A DNA stretch of 64,000 nt, taken from positions 62,001-126,000 of the IMG/VR virus record IMGVR_UViG_3300046808_001241; one strand, 5' to 3'. The translations under genes and the position numbers were made by a program. This document shows positions 2-33,656 of the stretch, in pieces. The notes below the pieces were generated by a model, which saw only the letters and a list, made by a program, of their open reading frames with translations, was not told where the DNA came from and did not search any database. Within the stretch, counting starts at the first letter, position 1; each line of letters starts with the position of its first letter.

Positions 2-877
2 AATCAAAACGTACACGTGTTTACTCATTCGGACTTAGATGGTGTTGTTAGCTATCTTGTTCTGTGTTGGGTTTACAATAAAAAATTGAGTGTTACTCCA
101 ACAACACCAATGAAACTAGACCAAGATTACAACAAATTTGTTCAATCCAACAAACAATATGACAAACTTTATTTTCTGGATTTAGACGTTTCAAAAATTG
201 GAGAAAACATTGATAACAAAAATACAGTTGTTTTAGATCACCATAAAACAAACCTTTATCCTTTTAAAAACGCAATTACTCGAATTTACAACGAAACTTC
301 TTGCGCAAAGCTAATTTATGATACGTTTTTTAAAACGTCAGAAAAAAAGCTTTCAGCTGCTCAGAAAACACTATTAGCTCTTGCAGACGATTGGGACTCA
401 GCTACGAAAGCAACTCCATTATCTGAGGGGTTAAACATTGTATACCATTCAATGTCCGACAAGTTCAATTCGTTCGTTGAAGATTATTATAACGGATTCG
501 AACAATTTGATAAGTTCAAACAAAATACAATTACTTTATACAAAAAGCACAGAAAAGAATATTTAGATACATTGACTCCGTTTTTTGGTAAAGTAGAATT
601 TGAAGGCCAAAAAGACATTAAAGTTGGAGCAGTGTTTTGTGATAAATTTGTTCAAGAGTGTTGTGATTGGATGTTTGCTATTCACAACGTAGACGTAGCA
701 ATTGCTGTTTTGATTGATCAAAAGCGAATAGCTGTAAGAAGAAACATTAATTGTGACAAAGTAGATGTTTCTAAATTTGTTCAACGGATTGCTTCTGGTG
801 GCGGACACGAAGCTGCAGCTGGTGGTAATTTAACAGACGAATTTGTAGAATTTACTAAAATGTTGAAACCATTGTAA
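2..877 (+). CDS. DHH/DHHA1 family phosphoesterase (5' partial; frame open from the window edge)
   Basis: THSDLDG, DLD, DHH and C-terminal GGGHEAAAG motifs. Confidence 0.85.
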   Translation, partial: NQNVHVFTHSDLDGVVSYLVLCWVYNKKLSVTPTTPMKLDQDYNKFVQSNKQYDKLYFLDLDVSKIGENIDNKNTVVLDHHKTNLYPFKNAITRIYNETSCAKLIYDTFFKTSEKKLSAAQKTLLALADDWDSATKATPLSEGLNIVYHSMSDKFNSFVEDYYNGFEQFDKFKQNTITLYKKHRKEYLDTLTPFFGKVEFEGQKDIKVGAVFCDKFVQECCDWMFAIHNVDVAIAVLIDQKRIAVRRNINCDKVDVSKFVQRIASGGGHEAAAGGNLTDEFVEFTKMLKPL

Positions 878-17287: not shown

Positions 17288-20200
17288 TTAAATTAAAACA
17301 TACAATGTCCCAACTTCTTGCACTAAAGGTAGAGCAGAAACAGCAACGAGTTTTGTGATAGCACTAAGTCCTGGAGTAGCATTAGTAGTGTCGGTTTGTA
17401 CAAAGCTCGAAGAGGCGTTAGTAAACGTCGTGTAAGTAGATTCCCAGTTGGATGAAAGAGCTTTTAAGTCTGTTCCTTGGTAATTCCAAACCGTTGCTGA
17501 GTTTGTTTGAACCGTAGAATAAACAGAGTTCCAATCTGCAGAAGCGTTTTGCACTATTGTATTGACTTCTAAATTATCCGTATTTGTTAAACCAGAACCG
17601 TCTCCATAAAAAATTCCTGTGGCACTTACGTTTCCTGCAACCGTTAAAGCTTCGTTTGGAATTTCCGTATTAATGCCAACTGAGTTCGTCGCTCCGACGA
17701 AAAGTACAGACGTTCCAACTCCCGTTCCAGCATTAAATCCACCACTTACACTCAAAGTGTCAAGTATGGTTAAAGAAGACAATAAAACGTTGTTTGTCGA
17801 CAGGTAGTTTGTAACACTAGGAATTATTTCTGCAGTTTCTTCCCACGATGTACTCAAAGCATTAACAGTGTTAAAGGTGGACTGCCAATTAGCAGACAAG
17901 TCCTTAAGGTCCGTTCCTTGATAGCTCCATACTGTTGCTGAGTTTACTTGAACCGTGGTGTATACGTCATTCCAACTAGCAGATGTGCTTTGAACTATAG
18001 TATTGACGTTTAGGTCATCTGTATTTGTTAAACCAGAACCATCTCCATAAAAAACAGATGTAGCAGAAACAGAGCCAACAACAGTCAATGCCTCATTTGG
18101 AGTGTCTGTATTAATACCAATTTTTCCGCCATCTACAAACATGCTAACGCTTGTTCCGCCACCAACTTCCAATCCGCTCAAGGCAATGATAGATTCAAAG
18201 GCAGTTATGCTACCTACTACAGTCACATCTCCAGTAAGATTTCCTCCGGTTAATGGTAAAAAGCTTGAACGTACAAATGTGTGTATGTCTCCAAATTGCG
18301 TTTCTGTATAAGCAGACACTTGATCTAACTCAGTATTTACAGCCAAAAACTGAACATCAGAATAAGATGAAAGTCCATTGATTTTGACGTTGATACTAGA
18401 TAGTTGTTCTGCAGCAAAAGCAGATACTCCATCTAATTCTGTATTAACAGCTAAAAATTGAACATCGGAATAGGACGAAAGTCCGTCAATCTTGACATTA
18501 AGACTCGAGAGCTGAAATGCAGCAAAAGCAGATACTCCATCTAATTCTGTATTGATGTTTGTAAATTGATACTCTGCATATGAAGAGAGTTCATCGACTT
18601 TAGTATCAAGACTTGAGAGTTGAAATGCAGCAAAAGCAGATACTCCATCTAATTCTGTATTAACCTCTGAAAATTGATACTCTGCATATGAAGATACTGA
18701 ATCTAATTCGGTATTAATGTTTGTAAATTGACTTTCAGCATATGCTGATACAGATGTTAGAGAGTTTGTAAGAGCGCTTTCTACATTGTCTAAATTTGTT
18801 TGAAGAGTTGCTGATAAGGAGTCAGCATAACTCTTTGTGACAACGTCTTGAGCTGAAATTGGATTTAAAGCATTAACGATGAGATTGTTGCTCATGTTAA
18901 GCTGGTTGAGAATTACAGCTCCGTTAGAAGTAATTTCCTCAACAAATGTTCCATTTAAAGCATATAAACTTTCAGTGGAAGAAATTTGTCCAACCACTGT
19001 AAGCTTTTTGTTTGGATTAGATGTTCCAATGCCTACGTTAGTTCCGTCAGAATAAACATTGCTATCAATTACTGAACTATCAGTATCAAATTTTGGCAGA
19101 TAGTTTTGAGTTAGAGCTCCGCTTAAAAAGTTCGCAGTAGTATCCCAAATTTTAGAATTAATTGTTCTGGTTTGAAGAATGTTGTTAATATCATGTATTA
19201 CAACTGTATTAGTCGAGCCATTAGAAAGAGTTCCTATGATGGCTGATCCAGCAACATATAAATTTTCTGAAGCAGAAATTTCACCATTAACGGTAAAGTC
19301 TACGTTAGGAGTGCTTGTCTTTACGCCAACATTTGGATTATCACTATTGATTCCTCCGACGTGAAGAACCTCGACTCCCGCATCAATGTCATAAAAAGAA
19401 GCAATGTCTCCAGTTCCATCGTTTCCAATCCATGCAGCAGGACCTGACCCAATATGAACCACGCTTAAAGAACTAGTGGTTGCAAATACTGTGTTTGCAA
19501 AAGTAGATGTGCCAGTTGCAGTAAGATCTCCAAAAATTGTAACATTGCCAAAGAATTTTGAGCTTCCGTGCACAGTGAATGTATCTGTTGGACTGCTTGT
19601 ATTAATTCCAACAAAAACACCATCGTCATATATAATGCTGTTAACTAACGAACTATTAGAATCAAACTTCGGCAAATAATTTTGAGTTAGAGCTCCACTT
19701 AAAAAGTTAGCACTGGTATCCCAAACTCTTGAATTAATTTCTCGAGTTTTTAAAGTATTATTTGCATCCTTAATAATAACATCATTCGTTGTATCAGAAG
19801 GAATACTACCAAACGTAGCTGTTCCAGAAGAACTAATATTTTCACTAAGAGTTAAGCTACCTGTAACAAATTCTGCTCCTTCAATATACAAATCTCCAGT
19901 CGAGCTCAAGTTACCGACTATAGTCAAAGCCTCATTTGGAGTGGAAGTATTAATTCCGACGTTTGTCCCGTCAGAGTAAACGTTGCTATCAACCAATGTG
20001 CTGTCATTGTCAAATTTTGATAGATAATTTTGAGTCAGAGCTCCGGTCAATAGATTAGAAGTAGTGTCCCAAACTCTTGGATTGATTTCCCTAGTTTCTA
20101 AAGTGTTGTTGTCATCTTTTGTAATAACACTGTTTGTTAATCCTGTAAAAAGACTACTAATACTAACCGTGCCAGTAGAACTAACATTTTCAACAACGGT

Positions 20201-21274
20201 TAAATTTTGCTGAATGTATACACTTGAATCTACATGCACGTCTCCACTCGAACTTATATTTCCAACAACCGTTAGTGCTTCATTTGGACTTCCAGTAGCA
20301 ATGCCTACTCGACCAGCAGAATCAACAACAAAAGGCGTTTGAGCCGAGCTTGTAACAAAAACACTGTTCCCTGTACCCTCTTGAAAAACAGTTAAAGCTG
20401 CATCTTCTTTGTTGCTAATTACAGACAGAGAGCCATTTATAGTGGCAGTGTTTAGTGAAGACAAACTTCCGAGAACCGTATCAGAGTCAATTGTTAAATT
20501 TCCTGTAGCACTTGCACTGCCTACAATAGTTAGTTCTACATTTGGAGTATTAGTGTTAATGCCTACTAAATTGTTGGTAACATCAGCAAATAATACATCA
20601 GTATCAACCTCTAGATTGCCTTCAATTATATTACTTCCTGTAACATATACACTACCTGTAACAATTAAGTCTCCTACAGAGCTAATATTTCCAACAACAG
20701 TAAACTTTTCGTTCGGAGAATCAGTACCTAAACCAACATAGCCATTGTCTTGAAAAATAATATCATCTCCATTAATATCAATAAAATGAGCAATAGGCTC
20801 GTTGCCATATTGATTAACGGTTAAAGCAGGCCCAGTACCGTAATTTGTAATAGTCAATGCAGATCCAGCTACAACTGTGGTATCTAATTCAACTGCAGAT
20901 CCCAGTACAGTCAAATTCCCGTTTAAAATTAAATTTCCATCAACTGTGCTATTACCAGCAACACTTAAATTTTGTTGTACGGTTAAATTGCTGTTTAAAA
21001 AACTATTGCCGGCAACAGTTAAAGTTCCTGCAATCTGTGCATTGTTTTGTACAGATAGATCATTTGTAATTGATGCGTTTTCTGAAAAAATGCCTTTTTG
21101 AGCTGAAAGATTTTCAGTGGTTAGAATGTCTCCTTCAGAAAAAAATTCTCCTTGAAAAGGTTCCTCAAAAGAAGCTATTGGATCATAACTAGAATCATTG
21201 AACGAGTTATTTTTTGTCGTTCTTTTGCTATGATGGTTTTGTCTATGAAATTTATTGTGAAACCGGTTCGACAT
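17288..21274 (-). CDS. long tail fibre/adhesin-like protein (1328 aa)
   Basis: Many VGI.T.TPNEALTV.GNISS.G beta-repeats, duplicated modules, central coiled-coil repeats. Confidence 0.8.
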   Translation of the reverse strand: MSNRFHNKFHRQNHHSKRTTKNNSFNDSSYDPIASFEEPFQGEFFSEGDILTTENLSAQKGIFSENASITNDLSVQNNAQIAGTLTVAGNSFLNSNLTVQQNLSVAGNSTVDGNLILNGNLTVLGSAVELDTTVVAGSALTITNYGTGPALTVNQYGNEPIAHFIDINGDDIIFQDNGYVGLGTDSPNEKFTVVGNISSVGDLIVTGSVYVTGSNIIEGNLEVDTDVLFADVTNNLVGINTNTPNVELTIVGSASATGNLTIDSDTVLGSLSSLNTATINGSLSVISNKEDAALTVFQEGTGNSVFVTSSAQTPFVVDSAGRVGIATGSPNEALTVVGNISSSGDVHVDSSVYIQQNLTVVENVSSTGTVSISSLFTGLTNSVITKDDNNTLETREINPRVWDTTSNLLTGALTQNYLSKFDNDSTLVDSNVYSDGTNVGINTSTPNEALTIVGNLSSTGDLYIEGAEFVTGSLTLSENISSSGTATFGSIPSDTTNDVIIKDANNTLKTREINSRVWDTSANFLSGALTQNYLPKFDSNSSLVNSIIYDDGVFVGINTSSPTDTFTVHGSSKFFGNVTIFGDLTATGTSTFANTVFATTSSLSVVHIGSGPAAWIGNDGTGDIASFYDIDAGVEVLHVGGINSDNPNVGVKTSTPNVDFTVNGEISASENLYVAGSAIIGTLSNGSTNTVVIHDINNILQTRTINSKIWDTTANFLSGALTQNYLPKFDTDSSVIDSNVYSDGTNVGIGTSNPNKKLTVVGQISSTESLYALNGTFVEEITSNGAVILNQLNMSNNLIVNALNPISAQDVVTKSYADSLSATLQTNLDNVESALTNSLTSVSAYAESQFTNINTELDSVSSYAEYQFSEVNTELDGVSAFAAFQLSSLDTKVDELSSYAEYQFTNINTELDGVSAFAAFQLSSLNVKIDGLSSYSDVQFLAVNTELDGVSAFAAEQLSSINVKINGLSSYSDVQFLAVNTELDQVSAYTETQFGDIHTFVRSSFLPLTGGNLTGDVTVVGSITAFESIIALSGLEVGGGTSVSMFVDGGKIGINTDTPNEALTVVGSVSATSVFYGDGSGLTNTDDLNVNTIVQSTSASWNDVYTTVQVNSATVWSYQGTDLKDLSANWQSTFNTVNALSTSWEETAEIIPSVTNYLSTNNVLLSSLTILDTLSVSGGFNAGTGVGTSVLFVGATNSVGINTEIPNEALTVAGNVSATGIFYGDGSGLTNTDNLEVNTIVQNASADWNSVYSTVQTNSATVWNYQGTDLKALSSNWESTYTTFTNASSSFVQTDTTNATPGLSAITKLVAVSALPLVQEVGTLYVLI
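18295..18752 (-). repeat. about 8-9 tandem 54-nt (18-aa) intragenic repeats
   Basis: VSA(F/Y)A..Q(F/L)..(I/V)NTELD(G/S) units; DNA such as gcagcaaaagcagatactccatctaattctgtatt recurs. Confidence 0.8.
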
Positions 21275-21516: not shown

Positions 21517-23163
21517 TTGTTAAAAATGGCTACATTTAATGCTAAATCAGAAAGCGAAGCTATAGCAAGCGGAGAGCTTAAACCATACATTCAAAAATAT
21601 GGAAAAGAAGGAGCATATGACGTATATGCCGCAGAACAATTTGCAAAACAAGAATTTGCAACAAAAGGAGAAAAGGAAGCAGCTTCTAATACAAGTGCAT
21701 TGGTAGCTAAACAAGCTCTAAGAAATGCAATAGCCTCCAGTCAAGGCAAGAGAAAAGAATGGTATATAAAACTTCTACAATCTTTAGATAATACAGCCTC
21801 AGCAACCGGAGACGCATTTGAGGGATTGGACAAATATACTATCAATGCTATTAAAAATTTACATTCCGTTCATACATTTATACAGGATGGAATAACATCT
21901 ACTACGTCCGGAATAGCCGGTAGCATTAATAATGCTACTAGAGGGTTACAACAATTTGAAGAGGAGGCAATTCATGACATCCAGGGTTGGGGAGCTGGTG
22001 TTAAAAAAGCATTAGAACCAGTTGGATTGTGTTCTGCAATAGGAGATTTAACTGACGTTGCTAAAAACCCTCTTGGCGCTCCTCAATTTTTAGCAAATTC
22101 GCTTACGTCATTGGTTGGCAAAATTAGTCCGTCTTTCGTTCAAAAGATGGACGATAGTTTTACTTCATTAAAGTTGGAAGGCTTAGCACATCTTCCTAGC
22201 AAAATGATGGGAAGTATTAGAAGTTTAGCAACAGCTGCAGACGCAATATTGTCAGTGCCATTCGAAATCATGTCAGATGTTTATAATGGACTAATGGATA
22301 TTCTTGAAGCAATTGCTGATTTAATCGACGGTCTTGTAACATTAGTGATGAATTTAGCAATGTCTGTTGTTAAAGCTTTAGTCGATGCGATTATTCCCGT
22401 CGAGGAGCTTTTAGAATTCTTTTCTGCGGTAGGAGATCTAGCTTCATTTGTAGGAGACATAGCAGGAATGGTCGGAGGTTTCAGTGCAGTAACAAACATA
22501 ACAAGCCAAGTTACAGACATTGCTTCTAGCGCAACTTCACTAATCAACAATCCGTTACAACTTATACCAGGAGCAAATCAAGCAATTGGCCAAGTTACTG
22601 GATCGGTGGGTCAAATAACAGGAGCTCTAAGGAACCCCGAACAGTTCTTGCCTCCAGAAATCAGTCAACAAATGCAAAAAATTTCACAAATTCCTGGACT
22701 AGGGTTTGTTGGAAACTTGGGGTATAGTGTCGGAGATGCTCTAGACACTTTATCAGATGGTGTGTTTGAAGCAGCTCTTGGCAAATATGCTGACAAATCT
22801 CCAATGATCAAATCATTTTTTAATAAACCTCAAGACGAACCTCCAGCAGTAGATACACAAGAAGCTTATTCTGATGATTATGATCCACCAAAAGCAGGCA
22901 TTCATTCGCTTGACGGCGCTGGCAATCCTGCTATTGTTGATACAAGTTCTTATAAGATATTTAAGGAAGATGCTTCTCAACAAAACACAGACTCTGTATC
23001 AGCTTTTGGATTTACGGAACGCAAAAGAAATCCATCAGACCCAGTCGTTATAGAAGCATACGGAGCAAGAGAAGAACGTTTTTCTGATGGTTCTTCGGTG
23101 ATTACTGCTCCAAACGGACAACGTGTCAGAAGATTTCCGGATGGACGAGAAGTTGCTATCTAA
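21517..23163 (+). CDS. Ala/Gly-rich helical virion protein (baseplate hub or tape-measure-like)
   Basis: Amphipathic A/G/I/V-rich helices; upstream of the gp5-like gene. Confidence 0.5.
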   Translation: MLKMATFNAKSESEAIASGELKPYIQKYGKEGAYDVYAAEQFAKQEFATKGEKEAASNTSALVAKQALRNAIASSQGKRKEWYIKLLQSLDNTASATGDAFEGLDKYTINAIKNLHSVHTFIQDGITSTTSGIAGSINNATRGLQQFEEEAIHDIQGWGAGVKKALEPVGLCSAIGDLTDVAKNPLGAPQFLANSLTSLVGKISPSFVQKMDDSFTSLKLEGLAHLPSKMMGSIRSLATAADAILSVPFEIMSDVYNGLMDILEAIADLIDGLVTLVMNLAMSVVKALVDAIIPVEELLEFFSAVGDLASFVGDIAGMVGGFSAVTNITSQVTDIASSATSLINNPLQLIPGANQAIGQVTGSVGQITGALRNPEQFLPPEISQQMQKISQIPGLGFVGNLGYSVGDALDTLSDGVFEAALGKYADKSPMIKSFFNKPQDEPPAVDTQEAYSDDYDPPKAGIHSLDGAGNPAIVDTSSYKIFKEDASQQNTDSVSAFGFTERKRNPSDPVVIEAYGAREERFSDGSSVITAPNGQRVRRFPDGREVAI

Positions 23164-23225
23164 AAGACAAATCAGTAATTATTTTTTTAAAAGATGCATA
23201 ACCCAAACGAAAGAGCATTACGAAA

Positions 23226-25421
23226 ATGAAAACTTACTATGGCAATTACCTAGGATTAGTCGTGAATTCTAGTGATCCTGAATATAGAGGAAGAGTTCAA
23301 ATTTTTATTCCGCACGTTATGCCAGCTCTTTATGATGGGTGGAATAAAGAGGGAACAGACATTCAAATTTCGTGTGTTGGCTCAAATATTCCTGAAGGGC
23401 TAACACCAGAAATTCATCAGAGACTAGTTCAAATTCTTCCTTGGGCTGAAGCTGCTTCTCCAATTATTGGAGGCTCTGCTCCGGGTAATTTGTTTTCGAG
23501 TATGGTTGCTGGTGCAGCAGCTGGAGCTTCTACTGGAGGAGTAATTGGTGCAGTCACTGGAGCAGTTGCAGCAGGAGTAAATCATATTTTTAATCAAGGG
23601 CCTACCTCTCAGCCAATTCCAGTTCAAGGAGGAGATGCTCAAGGCCTTGTTAATAGAGCTAAGCAAATTTCCGGGTTGGCGTTTGATGGAAAGAAGTGGG
23701 GCAAGTGCGCTCGAGGAACGACAGCTTTAGACAAAGCAGCGGGATTAATAGATAATAACGGGCCTTCTGCTGGCTTTTATGCTGCTAGCGACTTAGCTGC
23801 TGGAGGTACTAATAGAACGGGATACAATCCATACACAACAGGAACGGGAGCCAAATACTTTCGACAACCGTTTACAACAGACCCAGCTTTATATAAGCCT
23901 CAAATAGGAGATTCTGTTTTTGCTGGAGGAGGCGGCGGAGAAAATCACGGACATGCTCAGAAGTGCATAGGACTCGACAAACAAGGCAATGCTATATGGG
24001 CTAGTGATAATATACAGTCTAAGTTTTTTACATCAAATAAGACAGCTGATTACACTAACTTTACTGTATATAGATTAAATGATGTAGGAGTGGCAAGATA
24101 TGCTCAAGCAATTGGAGCGGACGTAACAAATCTGCAACCACCTACAACATTAGAGTCTGAGCCTACAGCAGCATCAGCAGCCTCAGCTCCCCCAAACCCT
24201 CAAGCTAAACCAGAGGGACTTCAGGAGGGAGATACTGCTCCGACCCCTCAAACAACAATGACTGCAAGCGGACCAGGAACAGGAGCACCAGCAGGGACAG
24301 TAAGCGGAGGAGGGACAGCAACTAACTCAGGAGTTCACAAAGGAAAAACTATAGTTTCAGCTACTGGAGTAAATGGGTCTGGTTTAACTACTGTAACATA
24401 CAGCGACGGCACAACCGCGACGCTAAATCAACCTAGACCAATAAGGAATAATAACCCAGGAAACTTAGAATATGGTTCATTTGCAAAAAAAATGGGAGCT
24501 GTTGGATCAGATGGAAGATATGCAGTTTTCCCCACAGCTGAAGCAGGAGCGAGCGCAAAGGTAGCTTTGCTTAAAACATCAACGTATCAAAATTTGAGTA
24601 TACGAGATGCTTTTAATAGATATGCTCCTCCAAGCGAAAATCCAAATTATCTAAGAGACTTACAATCAGGTACTGGGTTTGATATGAGTAGAAAAATGAG
24701 TTCTTTATCCGTTGAAGAATTCAACAAACTCACTTCAACTGTAGCAAAAATAGAAGGGTTCGACAGTCCATTACCTTCTGGTTCTGAACTTCCTCCCTCG
24801 TTTTCAACTCCCAATGTCGTTAACAACACAGATAGTAATGGTAGAACTCCTGTAGTAAATACAAACGATATGGCTAGTGGTTTATTTGCTTATCCCAATC
24901 CTGGAGCAATGGTTTGGGTATTCTTTAGAGAAGGCAATCCTCTATATCCTGTATATTTTGCTGCTAGTTATAGTTCAGCAGAATGGAGTAGCGCTTATAG
25001 AGGATCAAGTCCATCAGAATCGTACACAAATGACGGCCAAATAATTGGAACGGGAACTGTAATGCACTTTGGTCCAGAGGGAGGAATTAAAACTCAAAAC
25101 AGAGCCAACATAAACGATCCTCTAGACAACAATTCTTCTTTAACGTTGTTCCATCAACACGGCTCAGGAATCACTATGAAGAACGGCTGTGACTTCTATC
25201 GTTCTGCTGCAAACAAAAGAGACGAAGTAGACAATGACAGACATACCATTACAAGAGGATACAAAGAAGAATGGACTCAAGGAGATGAGAGCACAAACGT
25301 CAGAGGAGATACTTTTATAAAAGTGGGAAACATAAGCCAAGAAGCAATTGATGCTATGAATGAACTTTCTGAGATGTCATACAAATTAAATCAACAGCTA
25401 ATGGAAAAACCAAAAAGCTAA
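23226..25421 (+). CDS. gp5: gp5/VgrG-like baseplate hub with two inserted peptidoglycan hydrolase domains
   Basis: G.VV...DPE.RGRVQ and LPWA, then P.PG..VWVFF..G.P.YPVYF about 470 aa later; Cys/His amidase-like and RNNNPGN lysozyme-like domains in between. Confidence 0.8.
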   Translation: MKTYYGNYLGLVVNSSDPEYRGRVQIFIPHVMPALYDGWNKEGTDIQISCVGSNIPEGLTPEIHQRLVQILPWAEAASPIIGGSAPGNLFSSMVAGAAAGASTGGVIGAVTGAVAAGVNHIFNQGPTSQPIPVQGGDAQGLVNRAKQISGLAFDGKKWGKCARGTTALDKAAGLIDNNGPSAGFYAASDLAAGGTNRTGYNPYTTGTGAKYFRQPFTTDPALYKPQIGDSVFAGGGGGENHGHAQKCIGLDKQGNAIWASDNIQSKFFTSNKTADYTNFTVYRLNDVGVARYAQAIGADVTNLQPPTTLESEPTAASAASAPPNPQAKPEGLQEGDTAPTPQTTMTASGPGTGAPAGTVSGGGTATNSGVHKGKTIVSATGVNGSGLTTVTYSDGTTATLNQPRPIRNNNPGNLEYGSFAKKMGAVGSDGRYAVFPTAEAGASAKVALLKTSTYQNLSIRDAFNRYAPPSENPNYLRDLQSGTGFDMSRKMSSLSVEEFNKLTSTVAKIEGFDSPLPSGSELPPSFSTPNVVNNTDSNGRTPVVNTNDMASGLFAYPNPGAMVWVFFREGNPLYPVYFAASYSSAEWSSAYRGSSPSESYTNDGQIIGTGTVMHFGPEGGIKTQNRANINDPLDNNSSLTLFHQHGSGITMKNGCDFYRSAANKRDEVDNDRHTITRGYKEEWTQGDESTNVRGDTFIKVGNISQEAIDAMNELSEMSYKLNQQLMEKPKS

Positions 25422-25458
25422 TTTGATTAACTCTTGTTAAACTTTAAGTACAAATAAC

Positions 25459-26925
25459 ATGGCAATTTCCAACAACGAACAAAAGACTGTCAATCAACAA
25501 AAAGAGCAAGTTGCTAAAGAACAAGCCACTCAAACTCCGTCTTCACGTTCTTCAAATCAACGAGAGATTCAATGTCCTTTTTGTGCGCCACATGTTAAGA
25601 AAAAAGACGTAACCGGAGGAAGATCAGAAATTGTTATTCCGTTTTTTGACCCTCCGTTAAGAATTCCAATTCCTCCTTTTTTGACAAAAACCATCAAACC
25701 GGACCCTCAAAAATGCACTTGTGAAGGTAAACAAAAATTTAAAGATGTGTCTGACGATGTAGCTAAATATAATCAAGTAAAACAGCAAGCTCAAGCAAAT
25801 ATTGAAAAGTCGATTGAGCTCGAAGCTAAAATGGGCACGGGAGGAAACCGAACGACAGTCATTGAAAAAAGCGATACTCTAGTTGTAGGTTTAGGCTTCA
25901 ATAAAAATGTTTCTTATGAAACTATTCCTGAAGGACATTTTGCCCCTTCAAAATTAAATACTACAGATCCGGAAAATCTTGGTTTTGCTACAGGAGGAAA
26001 ATACAATGCAGTAGTTGGAAAACAAACTTCTGTCGGTTGGCCGAGCGCGGTCGGAAATTACAAAATAACTTGTGCCAACTCTTTTAATGTTACAGCTGGA
26101 GCAGGCGGTATAACATTAGACACAAAAGGACCTCTTACTTTTAATTCTGGTATTTTAAATTTAACCGGGCCTCAAGTAAACATTGGTAGTGCTAGTGGTC
26201 CTTTGACTCTTGAAGGAGATACGGTGAGCATCGGGGGCAAAACGATTACATTGACTCCGACTGATGCAAACGTTTTTGTTAAAGGAACGGTTAGCACTAC
26301 CGGAAACATTGTCGTAGGAGGGCAACTGCATGCTGAAACACTTTCTTTTTCCAAAGCTTCGTGTCCAGCAAAAGACAAAAGAACATCCACAAATGCTGGT
26401 AATCCAGACACAACCCAAACATCTCCAGCTGTTTGGGGAGGACCTCAAGTAAAGGCAATCACTTCCAGTGTGCTAGACATACAAATATATTTTCAAAATA
26501 TAATGACCAATTTTGAGACAGCTGCTATAAGCGTATTGTCTCCTTCTCAAATGACAAATTTAATGAATCGCATTGGAAACTTGGCAAAAAGCACCATTGT
26601 AATAGACTCCGCGATGATTACAGGCATCTGCATTACCCCAGCTGGTCCGGGCATTGTAATGAACTTTCCGCATGTGCACGGACTGCCTTCTTTGGTTCAT
26701 GATCACGGCATTAGGGTTCCTGATATTGATTGCGATAACTACTCCTCGCCTCAATCTTTAAGAGCAGCTGTTGTAAACGAAGCGCTTACTTCTAATGCTC
26801 CAGCCAAAAAGAAAACGACCACGCAAGAGCTCTTGAAATTTACAATGGCTATTCCCGGCAGTGTCAGTTCTTTTGCTGTAAACGCTCAGAAAAAGATATC
26901 TTGGGTTTTAAGTCACTTAAGTTAA
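25459..26925 (+). CDS. baseplate central spike, gp5 C-terminal beta-helix-like
   Basis: GGITL...G.L..., L.L.G..V beta-helix repeats; CPFC..CTC and HVH..HDH metal motifs. Confidence 0.6.
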   Translation: MAISNNEQKTVNQQKEQVAKEQATQTPSSRSSNQREIQCPFCAPHVKKKDVTGGRSEIVIPFFDPPLRIPIPPFLTKTIKPDPQKCTCEGKQKFKDVSDDVAKYNQVKQQAQANIEKSIELEAKMGTGGNRTTVIEKSDTLVVGLGFNKNVSYETIPEGHFAPSKLNTTDPENLGFATGGKYNAVVGKQTSVGWPSAVGNYKITCANSFNVTAGAGGITLDTKGPLTFNSGILNLTGPQVNIGSASGPLTLEGDTVSIGGKTITLTPTDANVFVKGTVSTTGNIVVGGQLHAETLSFSKASCPAKDKRTSTNAGNPDTTQTSPAVWGGPQVKAITSSVLDIQIYFQNIMTNFETAAISVLSPSQMTNLMNRIGNLAKSTIVIDSAMITGICITPAGPGIVMNFPHVHGLPSLVHDHGIRVPDIDCDNYSSPQSLRAAVVNEALTSNAPAKKKTTTQELLKFTMAIPGSVSSFAVNAQKKISWVLSHLS

Positions 26926-28368: not shown

Positions 28369-29127
28369 CTATTTATTTTTATTAGCGTTATATTTTTCTA
28401 CTTTATCGATAATAAACTTCAATATTTCAGAACGCATAATATCGTCCTTGGTAAACTCCACACAATGGATTCCTTGTTGTTTTGACTCTTCATCATTAAA
28501 CAAATCAAACATTGCTTTAAAGCCAGATTGTTCTTTGTGTTTCAAGTCCGTTTGCATAGGATCTCCAAGAATGAAATATTTTGTAAATTTACCGATTCTT
28601 GTTAAAGAAGTAAGCAATTCCGAGAAATTTGCATTCTGAGCTTCATCTACAATTACTACTTTTGCATTATACGATGCTCCTCTAAGATAATTTACTGGCA
28701 TTCCTTTAACTCTTTCGTCAGCATGCAGGCGCTTTATATCCCCTGTTGGTAACAATTCTTCGAGCTTGTCATTTAGTACGGACACAAAAAATTGTAATTT
28801 TTGGTCGGCATCGCCCGGAAGCGTACCCATAGAATGAGCAGCGCTTTCTATAATCGTTCTTACATAAATTATATCACTCACTCGCTTTTGATTTAAAAGT
28901 TCGAGAGCTGAATAAACCGCTAAAATGGACTTTGAAGTTCCAGCAGGACCAGAAAGAAAAATAATTTTAGTATCTTTATTAGTCGACAGCTCAATAAAGG
29001 CTTTTTGTTTTTCCGTCCATTCAAGCCCTCTTAAATTTAACGTATAATCAATTTTTTCCCTTTGATGTACTTTTGGAGAAGTGTCTTTTATTTGAGGTTT
29101 CGGTGTAATTTTTTTAGCTTTTTTCAT
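28369..29127 (-). CDS. phoH: PhoH-like ATPase
   Basis: GPAGTSKS Walker A variant, YLRG, VDEAQN, GDP.Q.DL. Confidence 0.92.
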   Translation of the reverse strand: MKKAKKITPKPQIKDTSPKVHQREKIDYTLNLRGLEWTEKQKAFIELSTNKDTKIIFLSGPAGTSKSILAVYSALELLNQKRVSDIIYVRTIIESAAHSMGTLPGDADQKLQFFVSVLNDKLEELLPTGDIKRLHADERVKGMPVNYLRGASYNAKVVIVDEAQNANFSELLTSLTRIGKFTKYFILGDPMQTDLKHKEQSGFKAMFDLFNDEESKQQGIHCVEFTKDDIMRSEILKFIIDKVEKYNANKNK

Positions 29128-31797: not shown

Positions 31798-33051
31798 ATG
31801 ATAGAAACTTCATTTAGAAGCTTTTTTGGACAAGCTTCTGAACAAATTATTTTAAAAGAACAAGCTGAGGGAGTATTAAAGCATCTTACTCACTTAGAAG
31901 AGCTCGTGTTGACATCTAAGAAGCAAGGGTTGGGAATTGCTATTCAATTTTTAAAAGAATTGTATGATGTGTTGAAGGGAAAGACGGACTCTACAACTTT
32001 CGTAACTGTCAAGTGGGATGGAGCTCCAAGCGCGATTGTGGGAATCAATCCAGAAAACAATCAATTTTTCGTATCAACAAAGAGTCTAGCCAACGTTAGT
32101 CCAAAAATTAACTACACAGAAGAAGATATTAACAAAAATCACGGACACGCTCCAGGCCTAGCAGAAAAATTAAAAATGGCTTTGAAGTATCTTCCTGCAG
32201 TTATTAAAGACGGAATTTATCAAGGAGACTTTTTATTTGATAAAAGAGACCTTAAACAACAAAATATTGACGGAGAAGACCTTATTTTATTCAAACCAAA
32301 CACGATTACATATGCTATTGATCAACACAGTGCTTTAGGACAAAGAATATCAAACGCTCAAATAGGAATTATTTTTCATACAAAATATACCGGAACCAGT
32401 TTACAGAATTTGAAAAAGGGTTCGGATGTTAGTGCATCCGAATTCAATCAAACGCAAGATGTTTTTGTTGATGATGCTAAATTCAAAGACATTTCCGGAT
32501 TAGCAACGTTTACAAAAGATGAGTCAGAGAAGTTTGAAACTCTTATTGATTCTTGTGAAACAGCCGGTAATAGAATTGGCTGGGAAGAAATTCCAGAAAA
32601 CGTTTATACAAATCTCAATACTTTTATTAATAGTTTGATTCGTCAAGGTAGATTTGTTCAAAAGCCTCAAGATGAGTTTAATAACTTTATTAAATGGATT
32701 AAAGAAAAGGGACAAAAAGCGGTTGATCTACTTAAAACAGAAAAAGGAAAACAAAAGAAGCAAGAAGCAGTTGACCAATTTGTTCAAATCATAGAACAAA
32801 GCCAAAACGACATCATAAACTTGTTTAATCTATCAAAAAAGCTCGAACAAGCAAAGATGTTGTTCATTAACAAATACAATTCTGCTGTTAAAACAAAACA
32901 ATTTTTAACTCAACCTGACGGATCTTTAAAAGTGACAGCTCCAGAAGGATATGTTGCTGTTGATCACTTAGGCAATATGGTAAAATTTGTATCCAGATTA
33001 GATTTTTCAGCAGCCAATTTTTCAGTTTCTAAAGGAGAAAAGTTTAAATGA
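31798..33051 (+). CDS. DUF6267-like protein with a ligase/nucleotidyltransferase motif I (KWDG)
   Basis: HLTHLEE, TVKWDGAP, FFVSTKS, QGDFLF, F.PNTITY, PEGYVA..K. Confidence 0.7.
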   Translation: MIETSFRSFFGQASEQIILKEQAEGVLKHLTHLEELVLTSKKQGLGIAIQFLKELYDVLKGKTDSTTFVTVKWDGAPSAIVGINPENNQFFVSTKSLANVSPKINYTEEDINKNHGHAPGLAEKLKMALKYLPAVIKDGIYQGDFLFDKRDLKQQNIDGEDLILFKPNTITYAIDQHSALGQRISNAQIGIIFHTKYTGTSLQNLKKGSDVSASEFNQTQDVFVDDAKFKDISGLATFTKDESEKFETLIDSCETAGNRIGWEEIPENVYTNLNTFINSLIRQGRFVQKPQDEFNNFIKWIKEKGQKAVDLLKTEKGKQKKQEAVDQFVQIIEQSQNDIINLFNLSKKLEQAKMLFINKYNSAVKTKQFLTQPDGSLKVTAPEGYVAVDHLGNMVKFVSRLDFSAANFSVSKGEKFK

Positions 33052-33656
33052 AAACCTTTCGCCAATTCTTTTTAGAGTCCATAAAAGATACAGTAGTGTT
33101 CGCATATGGTCGTTACAATCCTCCAACTGTTGGTCATATGAAGTTAATTGAAGCAGTCGTGAACGCTGCAAAGAAAAATAATTCTGATTATTTGATTGTG
33201 CCTTCCCACTCAACAAAACCATTAGATAAAAACCCTTTAACTGTAGATCAGAAGATCGAAATTCTGAAACACATGGTTCCCGACTCTGCAAAAGTATCTG
33301 CTTTTGGGTCGACATATATTAATACTCTTCAAAAGCTTCAAGAAATGGGCTTTCAAAACGTTATTCAGGTCTGTGGATCTGACAGAGAGCCAGAGTTTAA
33401 AAGACTGGTAGATATGTATAACGGAAAACCAGATAAAACGGGAAAAGTTCCATTTAATTTTCAATCATTTACTTTTATTTCTTCTGGAGACAGAGATCCA
33501 GATTCGGAAGGAGTAGAAGGAATGAGTGCTTCTAAACTGAGAAAATTAGCTATAGAAGGAAATGTGGACGAATTTAAACGTGGAATGGCTGATTCAGTTC
33601 CTGATGAGATTAAAACCAGCACTTATAATATTCTTAGAAAAATTCTTGCAAAATAA
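33048..33656 (+). CDS. HIGH-superfamily (cytidylyltransferase-like) nucleotidyltransferase
   Basis: GRYNPPTVGH, GSDR, RDPD.EG.EGMSASKLR. Confidence 0.85.
   Translation: MKTFRQFFLESIKDTVVFAYGRYNPPTVGHMKLIEAVVNAAKKNNSDYLIVPSHSTKPLDKNPLTVDQKIEILKHMVPDSAKVSAFGSTYINTLQKLQEMGFQNVIQVCGSDREPEFKRLVDMYNGKPDKTGKVPFNFQSFTFISSGDRDPDSEGVEGMSASKLRKLAIEGNVDEFKRGMADSVPDEIKTSTYNILRKILAK

What the first reader, a model, noticed from the sequence alone, without database searches (positions are those of the whole stretch)
23226..25421. gp5 OB-fold split by about 470 aa carrying two different cell-wall hydrolases and a glycine-zipper helix
Seen: the first half of the OB-fold (GRVQ..LPWA) is separated from its second half (PNPG..VWVFF..GNP.YPVYF, about 24894-24960). 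The insert holds a GAAAG..GGVIGAVTGAVAAG zipper, a Cys/His amidase-like domain (KCARG about 23706, HGHAQ about 23946, WASD) and an RNNNPGN..YAP..EN lysozyme-like domain (about 24444-24765). Established: in T4 gp5 a single lysozyme follows the intact OB-fold. Inference: a dual-activity puncturing hub with enzymes looped out of the OB domain, perhaps for an unusual envelope.
Basis: partly seen in the sequence, partly recalled or inferred. Interest (0 to 1): 0.65.

Follow-up and report, generated by a model that had tools for sequence, protein, structure and literature searches.

The report
Phage tail spike with swappable wall-cutting enzymes
A giant freshwater phage carries its cell-wall-cutting enzymes inside a loop of the small barrel domain of its tail spike, and near-identical phages in other lakes have swapped one of these enzymes for a different one at exactly the same spot.

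Summary
- a Gly/Ala-rich helix;
- a Tae3/CHAP-like papain-fold amidase with invariant C161, H243 and D261;
- a Pro/Thr-rich linker;
- an Enc34-type (PHA02564) lysozyme-like glycosidase.

The architecture defines a large, unannotated metagenomic family. In 202 proteins the same N and C blocks flank inserts of 60-781 aa, which carry at least ten Pfam families of peptidoglycan hydrolases. A 98%-identical scaffold (P0002) carries an unrelated NlpC/P60 cassette with sharp DNA breakpoints at 23497/24165, and two other lake studies show the same breakpoints.

Enzyme activity, trimer geometry and any membrane role of the "zipper" are inferred, not shown. I rate it a new variant of a known kind: a spike with a nested, exchangeable lysin cassette site.

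The parts
23226..25421 (+). Central spike gene (731 aa, P0001), gp5/gpV/VgrG type, with nested enzyme cassettes
   Evidence: ORF. Pfam PF04717. Foldseek and VIA matches to the PVC, AFP, eCIS, R2 pyocin, P1, T4 and VgrG spikes.
23226..23480 (+). First half of the OB-fold (aa 1-85): strands 1-2 (aa 8-28), a roughly 40-aa minor insertion (aa 30-68), and strand 3 with LPWAE (aa 69-78)
   Evidence: PF04717 positions 1-32 match aa 8-39. DSSP strands 8-14, 23-27 and 73-78 with pLDDT 79-88. Invariant L71, P72, W73 and P79.
23496..23579 (+). Gly/Ala-rich small-xxx-small ('glycine zipper') helix, aa 91-118
   Evidence: Eleven overlapping small-xxx-small-xxx-small motifs and a KD maximum of 1.39. Modelled as two short helices at pLDDT about 51. 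Similar small-residue helices reach KD 1.0 in 43 of 202 family members.
23498..24164 (+). Exchangeable cassette 1 at DNA level (helix plus amidase plus the start of the linker). A near-identical phage has unrelated sequence here.
   Evidence: blastn of L010 against the window matches 22741-23497 (89.6%) and 24165-26661 (96.7%), with nothing between. Contigs of lake runs X3 and X4 stop matching at 23497 and resume at 24165.
23637..24080 (+). Papain-fold NlpC/P60-CHAP-like peptidoglycan amidase/endopeptidase domain (aa 138-285); putative triad C161, H243, D261
24123..24341 (+). Pro/Thr/Ala/Gly-rich low-complexity linker (aa 300-372)
   Evidence: The composition is visible in the sequence. pLDDT is below 50 for aa 304-311 and 344-372.
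24342..24785 (+). Three-stranded beta mini-domain (aa 376-401) plus Enc34-type (PHA02564) lysozyme-fold glycosidase (aa 402-520); near-invariant RNNNPGN, AP..E (E471) and E510-G511
24858..24980 (+). Second half of the OB-fold (aa 545-585): strands 4-5 with PNPG, VWVFF and YPVYF
   Evidence: PF04717 positions 43-75 match aa 550-582. Strands 552-555, 562-567 and 575-577 have pLDDT 85-90. The residues are invariant. This is the most widely conserved DNA island across lake contigs, 24901-24987.
24981..25418 (+). Spike shaft (aa 586-704, beta-strands and extended segments typical of an intertwined triple beta-helix) and C-terminal alpha-helix (aa 705-726)
   Evidence: pLDDT 88-95. VIA alignments to the VgrG, PVC and AFP spikes extend to model residues 655-706. 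There is a weak profile hit to the Klebsiella phage central spike 9f4a_BB (E 0.09). The trimer was not modelled.
21517..23163 (+). Upstream gene: tape-measure / gp29-like tail-length protein (548 aa)
   Evidence: PHROG tape-measure families, E 1e-8 to 1e-6, and weak baseplate-hub PHROGs.
25459..26925 (+). Downstream gene (488 aa), unassigned; possibly a beta-helical spike or tip partner. It is syntenic in the related contig L010.
   Evidence: Only weak leads: Pfam beta-helical trimerisation domain at E 0.067, and an Atlas feature hit at 0.89 to a cluster where 10% of members carry Gp5_C. Synteny.

Best explanation
This gene encodes the central membrane-piercing spike of a T4-like freshwater jumbo myophage. 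It is built like gpV or gp5: an OB-fold, then a short triple beta-helix. The loop between OB strands 3 and 4 has been turned into a docking site for peptidoglycan-hydrolase cassettes. That is the position where classical OB-folds carry their capping helix.

In this phage the loop carries four parts in order: a Gly/Ala-rich helix, a Tae3/CHAP-like cysteine amidase or endopeptidase, a flexible Pro/Thr linker, and an Enc34-type lysozyme-fold glycosidase. The two OB halves still fold into one barrel, so each subunit of the trimer presents two tethered enzymes at the side of the spike.

Inferred mechanism: on sheath contraction the spike crosses the outer membrane. The enzymes then cut both the peptide stems or cross-links and the glycan strands locally, opening the wall for the tail tube. 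The phage has a separate M15-type candidate endolysin, which fits the spike enzymes serving entry rather than lysis.

The site behaves as an exchangeable cassette position. Related phages carry different hydrolases there, and near-identical phages differ only in the first cassette.

Shown here: the sequence architecture, the family-wide pattern, the folds in models and the DNA-level swap. Inferred: catalysis, bond specificity, placement in the virion and the role at entry.
For: Context:
- The record is a 217-kb virus with direct terminal repeats.
- Terminase, sheath, tube and gp15-like genes lie in the window.
- A tape-measure-like gene lies directly upstream.
- TerL is about 34% identical to T4-like cyanophages and Agrobacterium phages.

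Split OB:
- The two Pfam halves match in the right order.
- The invariant residues lie in the two halves.

Enzymes:
- Amidase fold and triad.
- Enc34-type domain. Muralytic activity of the Enc34 domain was shown experimentally in PMC8943055.

Family:
- 202 proteins have both blocks, with inserts of 60-781 aa.
- The inserts hit VanY, NlpC/P60, SLT, DUF2272, Phage_lysozyme2, Phage_lysozyme, Glucosaminidase, Amidase_2, M23 and CHAP.

Cassette exchange:
- P0002 is about 96-99% identical outside aa 92-311 and unrelated inside.
- The DNA breakpoints are 23497 and 24165.
- The same breakpoints appear in contigs of two other lake studies, and the window's own cassette appears in a metatranscriptome library of a further study.
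- Modules combine independently among scaffolds that are 65-79% identical.

Separate candidate endolysin: a Peptidase_M15_4 ORF at G000:C1:30613-30807.
Against: - No experiment. All structural statements rest on AF2 monomer models. The full-length model has mean pLDDT 72.8, with the loop linkers and, in that model, the lysozyme-like domain poorly defined.
- The two-chain test of N half against C half gave no verdict (0.31 against a mark of 0.32).
- P0001's amidase domain does not reach any Pfam model. Its assignment rests on fold and conserved residues.
- The equivalence of E510 to the Enc34 catalytic Glu131 is inferred from conservation and alignment extent. It was not seen residue by residue.
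- No gp27-like hub partner was identified in the window.
- The host is unknown.
Confidence: 0.8

Rival explanations
1. The N block and the C block are not two halves of one barrel within a chain. In the trimer the barrel is completed by a neighbouring subunit (a domain swap), or the N block is a separate domain and the OB is incomplete.
For: The two-chain complex test did not reach its mark (formally no evidence either way). No trimer was modelled. A predicted aligned error map was not available for the monomer model.
Against: The monomer model places both halves in one barrel that superposes at 2.3-3.8 Å on three unrelated solved spikes over 76-88 residues, covering essentially the whole reference OB. 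The Pfam halves appear in the correct order and are complementary, positions 1-32 and 43-75. pLDDT is 79-90 in both halves.
Confidence: 0.08
2. The looped-out domains are not entry enzymes. They are degenerate wall-binding modules, or they are released to act as the lysis enzyme late in infection.
For: P0001's amidase domain misses all Pfam thresholds. Related phages carry an 80%-identical free-standing copy of the Enc34-type module away from the tail genes, and this genome has only the spike copy.
Against: Catalytic-type residues are invariant or nearly so: C161, H243 and D261, and E471 and E510. The genome has a separate M15_4 peptidase as an endolysin candidate. From established knowledge, tail-borne active lysins are the rule in comparable positions (T4 gp5, phi29 gp13). 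Inserts across the family are bona fide hydrolase families above Pfam thresholds.
Confidence: 0.1
3. The apparent cassette polymorphism and the long insert are artefacts of metagenome assembly, that is, chimeric contigs joined at conserved OB islands.
For: The OB islands are conserved at DNA level in many co-occurring phages. Such islands could mislead assemblers.
Against: The window variant sits on a 12-kb and a 53-kb contig with 0 differences. The P0002 variant was assembled independently in two ENA samples. It appears with identical breakpoints in two further studies. The breakpoints at 23497/24165 lie outside the OB islands (23286-23333 and 24901-24987). Reading frames are intact in all 202 members.
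Confidence: 0.02

Closest known systems
Bacteriophage T4 gp5 tail-associated lysozyme (PDB 1k28, 1wth)
   Different: In T4 one GH24 lysozyme follows a contiguous OB (chain residues 6..98). Here two enzymes of other families sit inside the OB, between strands 3 and 4. There is no match to Gp5_OB, Phage_lysozyme or Gp5_C at Pfam E of 1 or less. There is no GH24 anywhere in the genome.
gpV-type spikes without enzymes: P1 baseplate spike (9vzk_q), P2 gpV, R2 pyocin spike (4s37), eCIS/PVC/AFP and T6SS VgrG OB-plus-helix modules; Pfam PF04717
   Same: This is the best structural and sequence match for the scaffold: P1 aligns over 76 aa at rmsd 2.3 with 33% identity. Both Pfam PF04717 halves match. 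The overall plan is an OB plus an intertwined beta-helix.
   Different: Those OBs are contiguous, with a short strand 3-4 loop, and carry no enzyme. The cultured relatives checked also have intact OBs: S-RIM50 gp5 and the IG49 310-aa ORF matching PF04717 positions 2-73.
T6SS peptidoglycan amidase effectors Tae3 (4hzb), Tse1/Tae1 and Tae4, and phage CHAP lysins (LysK, LysGH15)
   Different: The Tae proteins are free effectors loaded on Hcp or VgrG. Here the domain is covalently nested in the spike. The domain reaches no Pfam NlpC/P60 or CHAP threshold, and its bond specificity is unknown.
Hafnia phage Enc34 endolysin catalytic domain (PHA02564 family, PDB 7q47; PMC8943055), and the N-terminal domain of Gp29 in 9vvp
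   Same: Sequence and fold homology. The shared RNNNPGN and aromatic-APP motifs are visible in the alignments. A conserved Glu lies on the last core helix.
   Different: Enc34 is a free endolysin with a C-terminal membrane domain. Here the domain is internal to a spike and preceded by a small beta mini-domain. The paper proposes N-acetylglucosaminidase activity by analogy with GH73, so 'lysozyme' in the strict muramidase sense is not established.
Other bifunctional or embedded virion lysins (from my own knowledge): phi29 gp13 (lysozyme plus M23 peptidase on the tail knob), staphylococcal tail lysins with CHAP plus LYZ2, and tape-measure proteins with embedded lytic motifs (mycobacteriophage TM4, T5 Pb2)
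   Same: Two wall-cleaving activities sit on one tail protein, or lytic modules are embedded inside a structural tail protein.
   Different: None of them, to my knowledge, places the enzymes inside the OB-fold of the central spike. None has been described as a multi-family exchangeable site. My literature searches found no description, but the library is incomplete.

Membership tests
gpV/gp5/VgrG central-spike OB domain (Pfam PF04717 Phage_base_V) | Sequence match to the family model above its curated cut-off | tested here: met
   The C half scores 24.0 bits against a cut-off of 23.8 (E 5e-5), positions 43-75. The N half adds 14.6 bits, positions 1-32. The match passes only narrowly because the domain is split.
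gpV/gp5/VgrG central-spike OB domain (Pfam PF04717 Phage_base_V) | Five-stranded OB barrel superposable on solved spikes | tested here: met
gpV/gp5/VgrG central-spike OB domain (Pfam PF04717 Phage_base_V) | Trimeric intertwined beta-helix after the OB | tested here: inconclusive
   The monomer model has strands in aa 600-659 and high-confidence extended segments in aa 660-704. It aligns to the VgrG, PVC and AFP shafts at high rmsd of 7-10 Å.
gpV/gp5/VgrG central-spike OB domain (Pfam PF04717 Phage_base_V) | Encoded within the tail/baseplate module of a contractile-tailed phage | tested here: met
   Sheath, tube and gp15-like genes are in the window. A tape-measure-like gene lies immediately upstream.
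T4 gp5-type tail lysozyme | Contiguous OB followed by a GH24 lysozyme domain and Gp5_C repeats | tested here: not met
   The OB is interrupted by about 460 aa. There is no PF06714, PF00959 or PF06715 hit at E of 1 or less. PF00959 is absent from the whole genome.
NlpC/P60-CHAP papain-like peptidoglycan amidases | Papain-like alpha+beta fold | tested here: met
NlpC/P60-CHAP papain-like peptidoglycan amidases | Conserved catalytic Cys (at a helix N-terminus) and His, plus a polar third residue | tested here: met
   C161, H243 and D261 are invariant in 18 homologous domains. Helix 161-171 starts at C161 and H243 starts strand 243-250. Which residue is the third member of the triad is inferred.
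NlpC/P60-CHAP papain-like peptidoglycan amidases | Match to Pfam PF00877 or PF05257 | tested here: not met
   P0001 has no hit. The alternative cassette in P0002 does hit PF00877, weakly.
NlpC/P60-CHAP papain-like peptidoglycan amidases | Hydrolysis of peptidoglycan stem peptides or cross-links | not testable with these tools
   This needs zymograms and muropeptide LC-MS.
PHA02564 / Enc34-type endolysin catalytic domain | Sequence homology to the family | tested here: met
   phmmer against 7q47, E 1.7e-4. Profile A3 against 7q47, E 1.2e-18 over chain residues 5-136, and against 9vvp_L, E 2.7e-25. PHROG endolysin and tape-measure lytic modules, E 1e-12 to 1e-13.
PHA02564 / Enc34-type endolysin catalytic domain | All-helical lysozyme alpha-lobe-like fold | tested here: met
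PHA02564 / Enc34-type endolysin catalytic domain | Catalytic Glu (Enc34 Glu131) and the aromatic residues Trp79 and Tyr95 (PMC8943055) | tested here: inconclusive
   E510-G511 and E471 are at least 90% conserved in 81 sequences. Y466 aligns with the Trp of the Enc34 W-A-P-P motif. The profile alignment reaches chain residue 136, but the residue-by-residue pairing at Glu131 was not printed.
Transmembrane glycine zipper | Repeated small-xxx-small motif on one helix face | tested here: met
   There are 11 overlapping [GAS]xxx[GAS]xxx[GAS] matches in aa 86-155.
Transmembrane glycine zipper | Hydrophobicity sufficient for a membrane span | tested here: not met
   The KD maximum over 19 aa is 1.39, against the usual threshold of about 1.6. 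Only 9 of 202 family members reach 1.5. The segment is modelled at pLDDT about 51.

The most novel reading that the evidence does not exclude
The strand 3-4 loop of the spike OB-fold is a dedicated 'warhead socket'. Lake jumbo phages shuffle wall-degrading cassettes through it by recombination, at the pace of strain-level variation, much as T6SS systems diversify evolved VgrG effectors. In addition, the Gly/Ala zipper helices that open each cassette come together from the three subunits. They form a membrane-active element, an anchor or a pore, once the spike reaches the periplasm. The spike would then be a three-function device: puncture, double wall digestion and inner-membrane engagement.
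Probability: 0.15. Interest if true: 0.8.

Novelty: new variant of a known kind. Interest (0 to 1): 0.62.

Why it matters
Tail-borne lysins are known, but in the textbook case (T4 gp5) the enzyme follows an intact OB-fold. Three things make this case worth attention.

1. It shows a second, topologically different way to arm a spike: nesting the enzymes in an OB loop that tolerates 60 to about 780 residues.
2. The site is a natural cassette position used by at least ten hydrolase families. That makes the family a ready-sorted catalogue of entry lysins from uncultured freshwater phages, useful for enzybiotic mining and for spike engineering.
3. The clean swap between near-identical phages found in several lakes makes a concrete question testable: does the peptidoglycan chemistry of the host, or host inhibitors of lysins, drive strain-level diversification of phage entry enzymes?

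The family has no detectable member among 50,697 deposited phage genomes, and its members are labelled 'hypothetical'.

Tried and rejected
- **Two-chain complex test.** Complex prediction on aa 1-90 against aa 540-600 gave no verdict (0.31 and 0.28 against a mark of 0.32). It is not used as evidence either way.
- **Insert-less family members.** None was found. The 20 proteins with only a C block are gene fragments or truncated calls whose N-termini are other cassette sequence. The shortest true inserts are 60-65 aa.
- **Sequence alignment to a contiguous OB.** hhalign of the family profile against the cyanophage S-RIM50 gp5 OB aligned only 22 residues (probability 2.7%). A cheap-gap Smith-Waterman bridged the insert but was not significant (z 1.1 against shuffles). 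The equivalence therefore rests on Pfam and structure.
- **Cultured phages.** tblastn of the C block against 50,697 phage records gave no match even at E of 1 or less. The whole protein hit only through the Enc34-type module.
- **Solved structures.** The family profile gave only a weak hit to the spike 9f4a (E 0.09).
- **Source annotation.** Cluster look-up gave 'hypothetical protein' for nine of the ten proteins checked. One was called 'lysozyme family protein'.
- **HxH motif.** The motif at aa 642-644 could have meant an iron-binding apex, as in P2 gpV (PMC12407873). I rejected this because the position is not conserved in the family consensus and it lies 90 aa from the C-terminus.
- **Downstream 488-aa ORF.** The Atlas search gave only sub-threshold leads.
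- **'Unusual envelope' idea.** No evidence was found for it.
- **Literature.** The searches found no description of an OB-nested lysin. One search failed on a term format.
Full report
**1. What is at the coordinates**

The finding coincides with one ORF, 23226-25421 on the + strand, 731 aa (P0001). The window is bases 62001-126000 of a 217,182-bp IMG/VR virus record with direct terminal repeats.

- The window encodes a large terminase, a tail sheath, a tail tube and a gp15-like sheath stabiliser.
- The terminase is about 34% identical to those of T4-like cyanophages and Agrobacterium/Rhizobium phages.
- The gene directly upstream (21517-23163) matches tape-measure PHROGs.
- The DNA occurs in freshwater and lake metagenomes.

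So the gene sits where a T4-like jumbo myophage would encode its central spike.

**2.

All motifs are at the stated places.

- Pfam finds only the second half of the 75-position Phage_base_V OB model in the full protein: positions 43-75 at aa 550-582, 24.0 bits against a cut-off of 23.8.
- Scanned alone, the N-terminal 90 residues match positions 1-32 at aa 8-39. The same half-match recurs in 7 of 10 family members (best E 7e-5).
- Among 150 aligned homologues the invariant residues cluster in the two halves: L71, P72, W73, P79 and G552, G560, F566, G570, P575-F578.
- There is also a smaller insertion of about 40 aa (aa 30-68) between strands 2 and 3.

**3. Do the halves fold together?**

|---|---|---|---|---|
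| P1 spike 9vzk_q | 3..79 | 76 aa, 33% identity | 2.3 Å | 8.2 |
| Algoriphagus eCIS VgrG 7aef_q | 371..449 | 79 aa | 3.0 Å | 7.0 |
| T4 gp5 1k28_A | 6..98 | 88 aa | 3.8 Å | 6.4 |

In the model the two segments therefore make one barrel. The insert lies between strands 3 and 4, where classical OB-folds carry their capping helix (established knowledge of the fold).

A separate two-chain test of the halves fell just under the tool's mark and gives no verdict. No trimer could be modelled within the size limits.

**4. What the loop carries**

- **aa 91-118, Gly/Ala-rich helix.** It has many small-xxx-small repeats but only modest hydrophobicity (KD maximum 1.39) and low model confidence.
- **aa 300-372, Pro/Thr-rich linker.**
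- **aa 373-520, beta mini-domain plus Enc34-type catalytic domain.**
  - Sequence: phmmer E 1.7e-4. A family profile gives E 1.2e-18 to 7q47 and 2.7e-25 to the N-terminus of a 1295-aa virion protein, Gp29 of 9vvp.
  - Function in the relative: the Enc34 domain is experimentally muralytic. Its authors propose a GH73-like N-acetylglucosaminidase mechanism with Glu131, Trp79 and Tyr95 (PMC8943055).
  - Conservation here: RNNNPGN, AP..E (E471) and E510-G511 are at least 90% conserved.

**5. The wider pattern**

An exhaustive profile-free search found 167 cluster representatives at E below 1e-30. Of 237 collected proteins, 202 have both the N block and the C block. The stretch between the blocks runs from 60 to 781 aa.

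Pfam on 108 non-redundant inserts found VanY (12), NlpC/P60 (6), SLT (5), DUF2272 (4), Phage_lysozyme2 (4), Phage_lysozyme (3), Glucosaminidase (2), Amidase_2, M23 and CHAP (one each). No member lacks the loop; the apparent ones are fragments.

Cultured relatives have contiguous OBs:
- S-RIM50 gp5;
- a 310-aa ORF of phage IG49 matching PF04717 positions 2-73.

No deposited phage genome matches the C block even at E of 1 or less. Nine of ten members whose source names I checked are labelled 'hypothetical protein', and one is labelled 'lysozyme family protein'.

**6. Cassette exchange caught in the act**

- P0002 is about 96-99% identical to P0001 over aa 1-91 and 312-731. Residues 92-311 are replaced by an unrelated segment that hits NlpC/P60.
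- At DNA level, its contig matches window 22741-23497 (89.6%) and 24165-26661 (96.7%), with nothing between.
- Contigs from two other lake studies stop matching at exactly 23497 and resume at 24165. Their loose ends read the start and end of the P0002-type segment.
- A metatranscriptome library of yet another study holds a 272-nt contig identical to the window's own cassette. An RNA library can contain DNA, so this shows presence, not transcription.
- Many contigs match only the two OB islands (23286-23333 and 24901-24987). One in the source sample has 1850 nt between them instead of 1589.
- Among scaffolds 65-79% identical to P0001, the helix, amidase and Enc34-type modules occur in different combinations.
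- Related phages also carry the Enc34-type module as a free-standing 209-aa gene, 80% identical and away from the tail genes. This genome has only the spike copy.

**7. How it most likely works**

Shown: the architecture, the model folds, the conserved catalytic-type residues, the family-wide cassette site and the DNA-level swap.

Inferred: the spike is a trimer. Each subunit presents two tethered enzymes beside the OB ring. After sheath contraction drives the spike through the outer membrane, they cut peptide and glycan bonds locally.

A separate Peptidase_M15_4 ORF elsewhere in the genome is a candidate endolysin. GH24, SLT, Amidase_2, M15_3, VanY and NlpC/P60 models find nothing else. This fits an entry role for the spike enzymes.

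The Gly/Ala helix is most simply a flexible, closely packing linker. A membrane role is not excluded but is unsupported.

**8. Comparison and novelty**

It works like T4 gp5 but fails that family's defining layout: a contiguous OB, then GH24, then Gp5_C repeats. It is a member of the gpV/VgrG OB-spike superfamily with a nested insert.

Dual-activity tail lysins and lysins embedded in structural tail proteins are known (my own knowledge: phi29 gp13, tape-measure motifs). Nesting in the spike OB, and a multi-family exchangeable site, were not found in the literature I could search. That library is incomplete.

I rate it a new variant of a known kind, interest 0.62.

**9. Limits**

- There are no experiments.
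- All structures are monomer models, and the linkers are poorly modelled.
- The pairing of E510 with Enc34 Glu131 is inferred.
- The hub partner and the host are unknown.
- The downstream 488-aa gene remains unassigned.

Noticed in passing
window 25459-26925 (+): A 488-aa ORF lies directly after the spike. Its N-terminus is Cys-rich (CPFC ... CTC). It has only weak beta-helix and Gp5_C-like leads. It is syntenic in the related contig L010. It could be a spike extension or tip partner that binds the spike's C-terminal helix.
   Followed up: partly
window 21517-23163 (+): A 548-aa ORF upstream matches several tape-measure PHROGs and, weakly, baseplate-hub PHROGs. It is probably the gp29-like tail-length determinator. 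No gp27-like hub gene was recognised in the window.
   Followed up: partly
window 17288-21274 (-): A 1328-aa ORF has many copies of a roughly 60-80-aa unit ending in a motif like GINT..PNEALTV.GN.S, plus a run of short heptad-like repeats near aa 790-900. It is probably a long fibre. It has only weak PHROG hits of unknown function.
   Followed up: no
G000:C1:30613-30807 (outside the window): A 159-aa ORF matches Peptidase_M15_4 above the cut-off (E 2e-9). It is the only other wall hydrolase found with nine family searches and is a candidate endolysin.
   Followed up: partly
L003 770-1399, and a 124-kb JGI contig: Related phages carry a free-standing 209-aa protein (P0238) that is 80% identical to the spike's Enc34-type module. 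It lies among non-tail genes (PhoH, PTPS and GTP cyclohydrolase are nearby). This suggests traffic of the module between a stand-alone gene and the spike socket.
   Followed up: partly
window 23313-23429 (aa 30-68): A second, smaller insertion of about 40 aa containing a helix (aa 61-70) sits between OB strands 2 and 3. It is conserved across the family (W39, N40, D45, G52, N54, L59, L67).
   Followed up: no
window 25149-25157 (aa 642-644): An H-x-H motif (HQH) lies in the spike shaft and recalls the iron-binding apex motif of P2 gpV. It is not conserved in the family and is far from the C-terminus.
   Followed up: partly
window 24801-24857 (aa 526-544): A strongly conserved motif, VNNTD..G.T...N.N.MA.G.F, lies just before the second OB half and marks the 3' border of every insert. 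It may be a structural clasp or a processing site.
   Followed up: no
window 28369-29127 (-), 31798-33656 (+): A PhoH-like gene, a DUF6267 gene (E 3e-97) and an adjacent cytidylyltransferase-like gene sit among the structural genes. The same DUF6267 and PhoH neighbourhood occurs in the related 124-kb contig.
   Followed up: no
run X1, record 2 (19.8-kb contig), laid on window 23286-23311 and 24901-24970: A co-occurring relative in the probable source sample shares only the two OB islands. It has 1850 nt between them instead of 1589, so several socket variants coexist in one lake sample.
   Followed up: no
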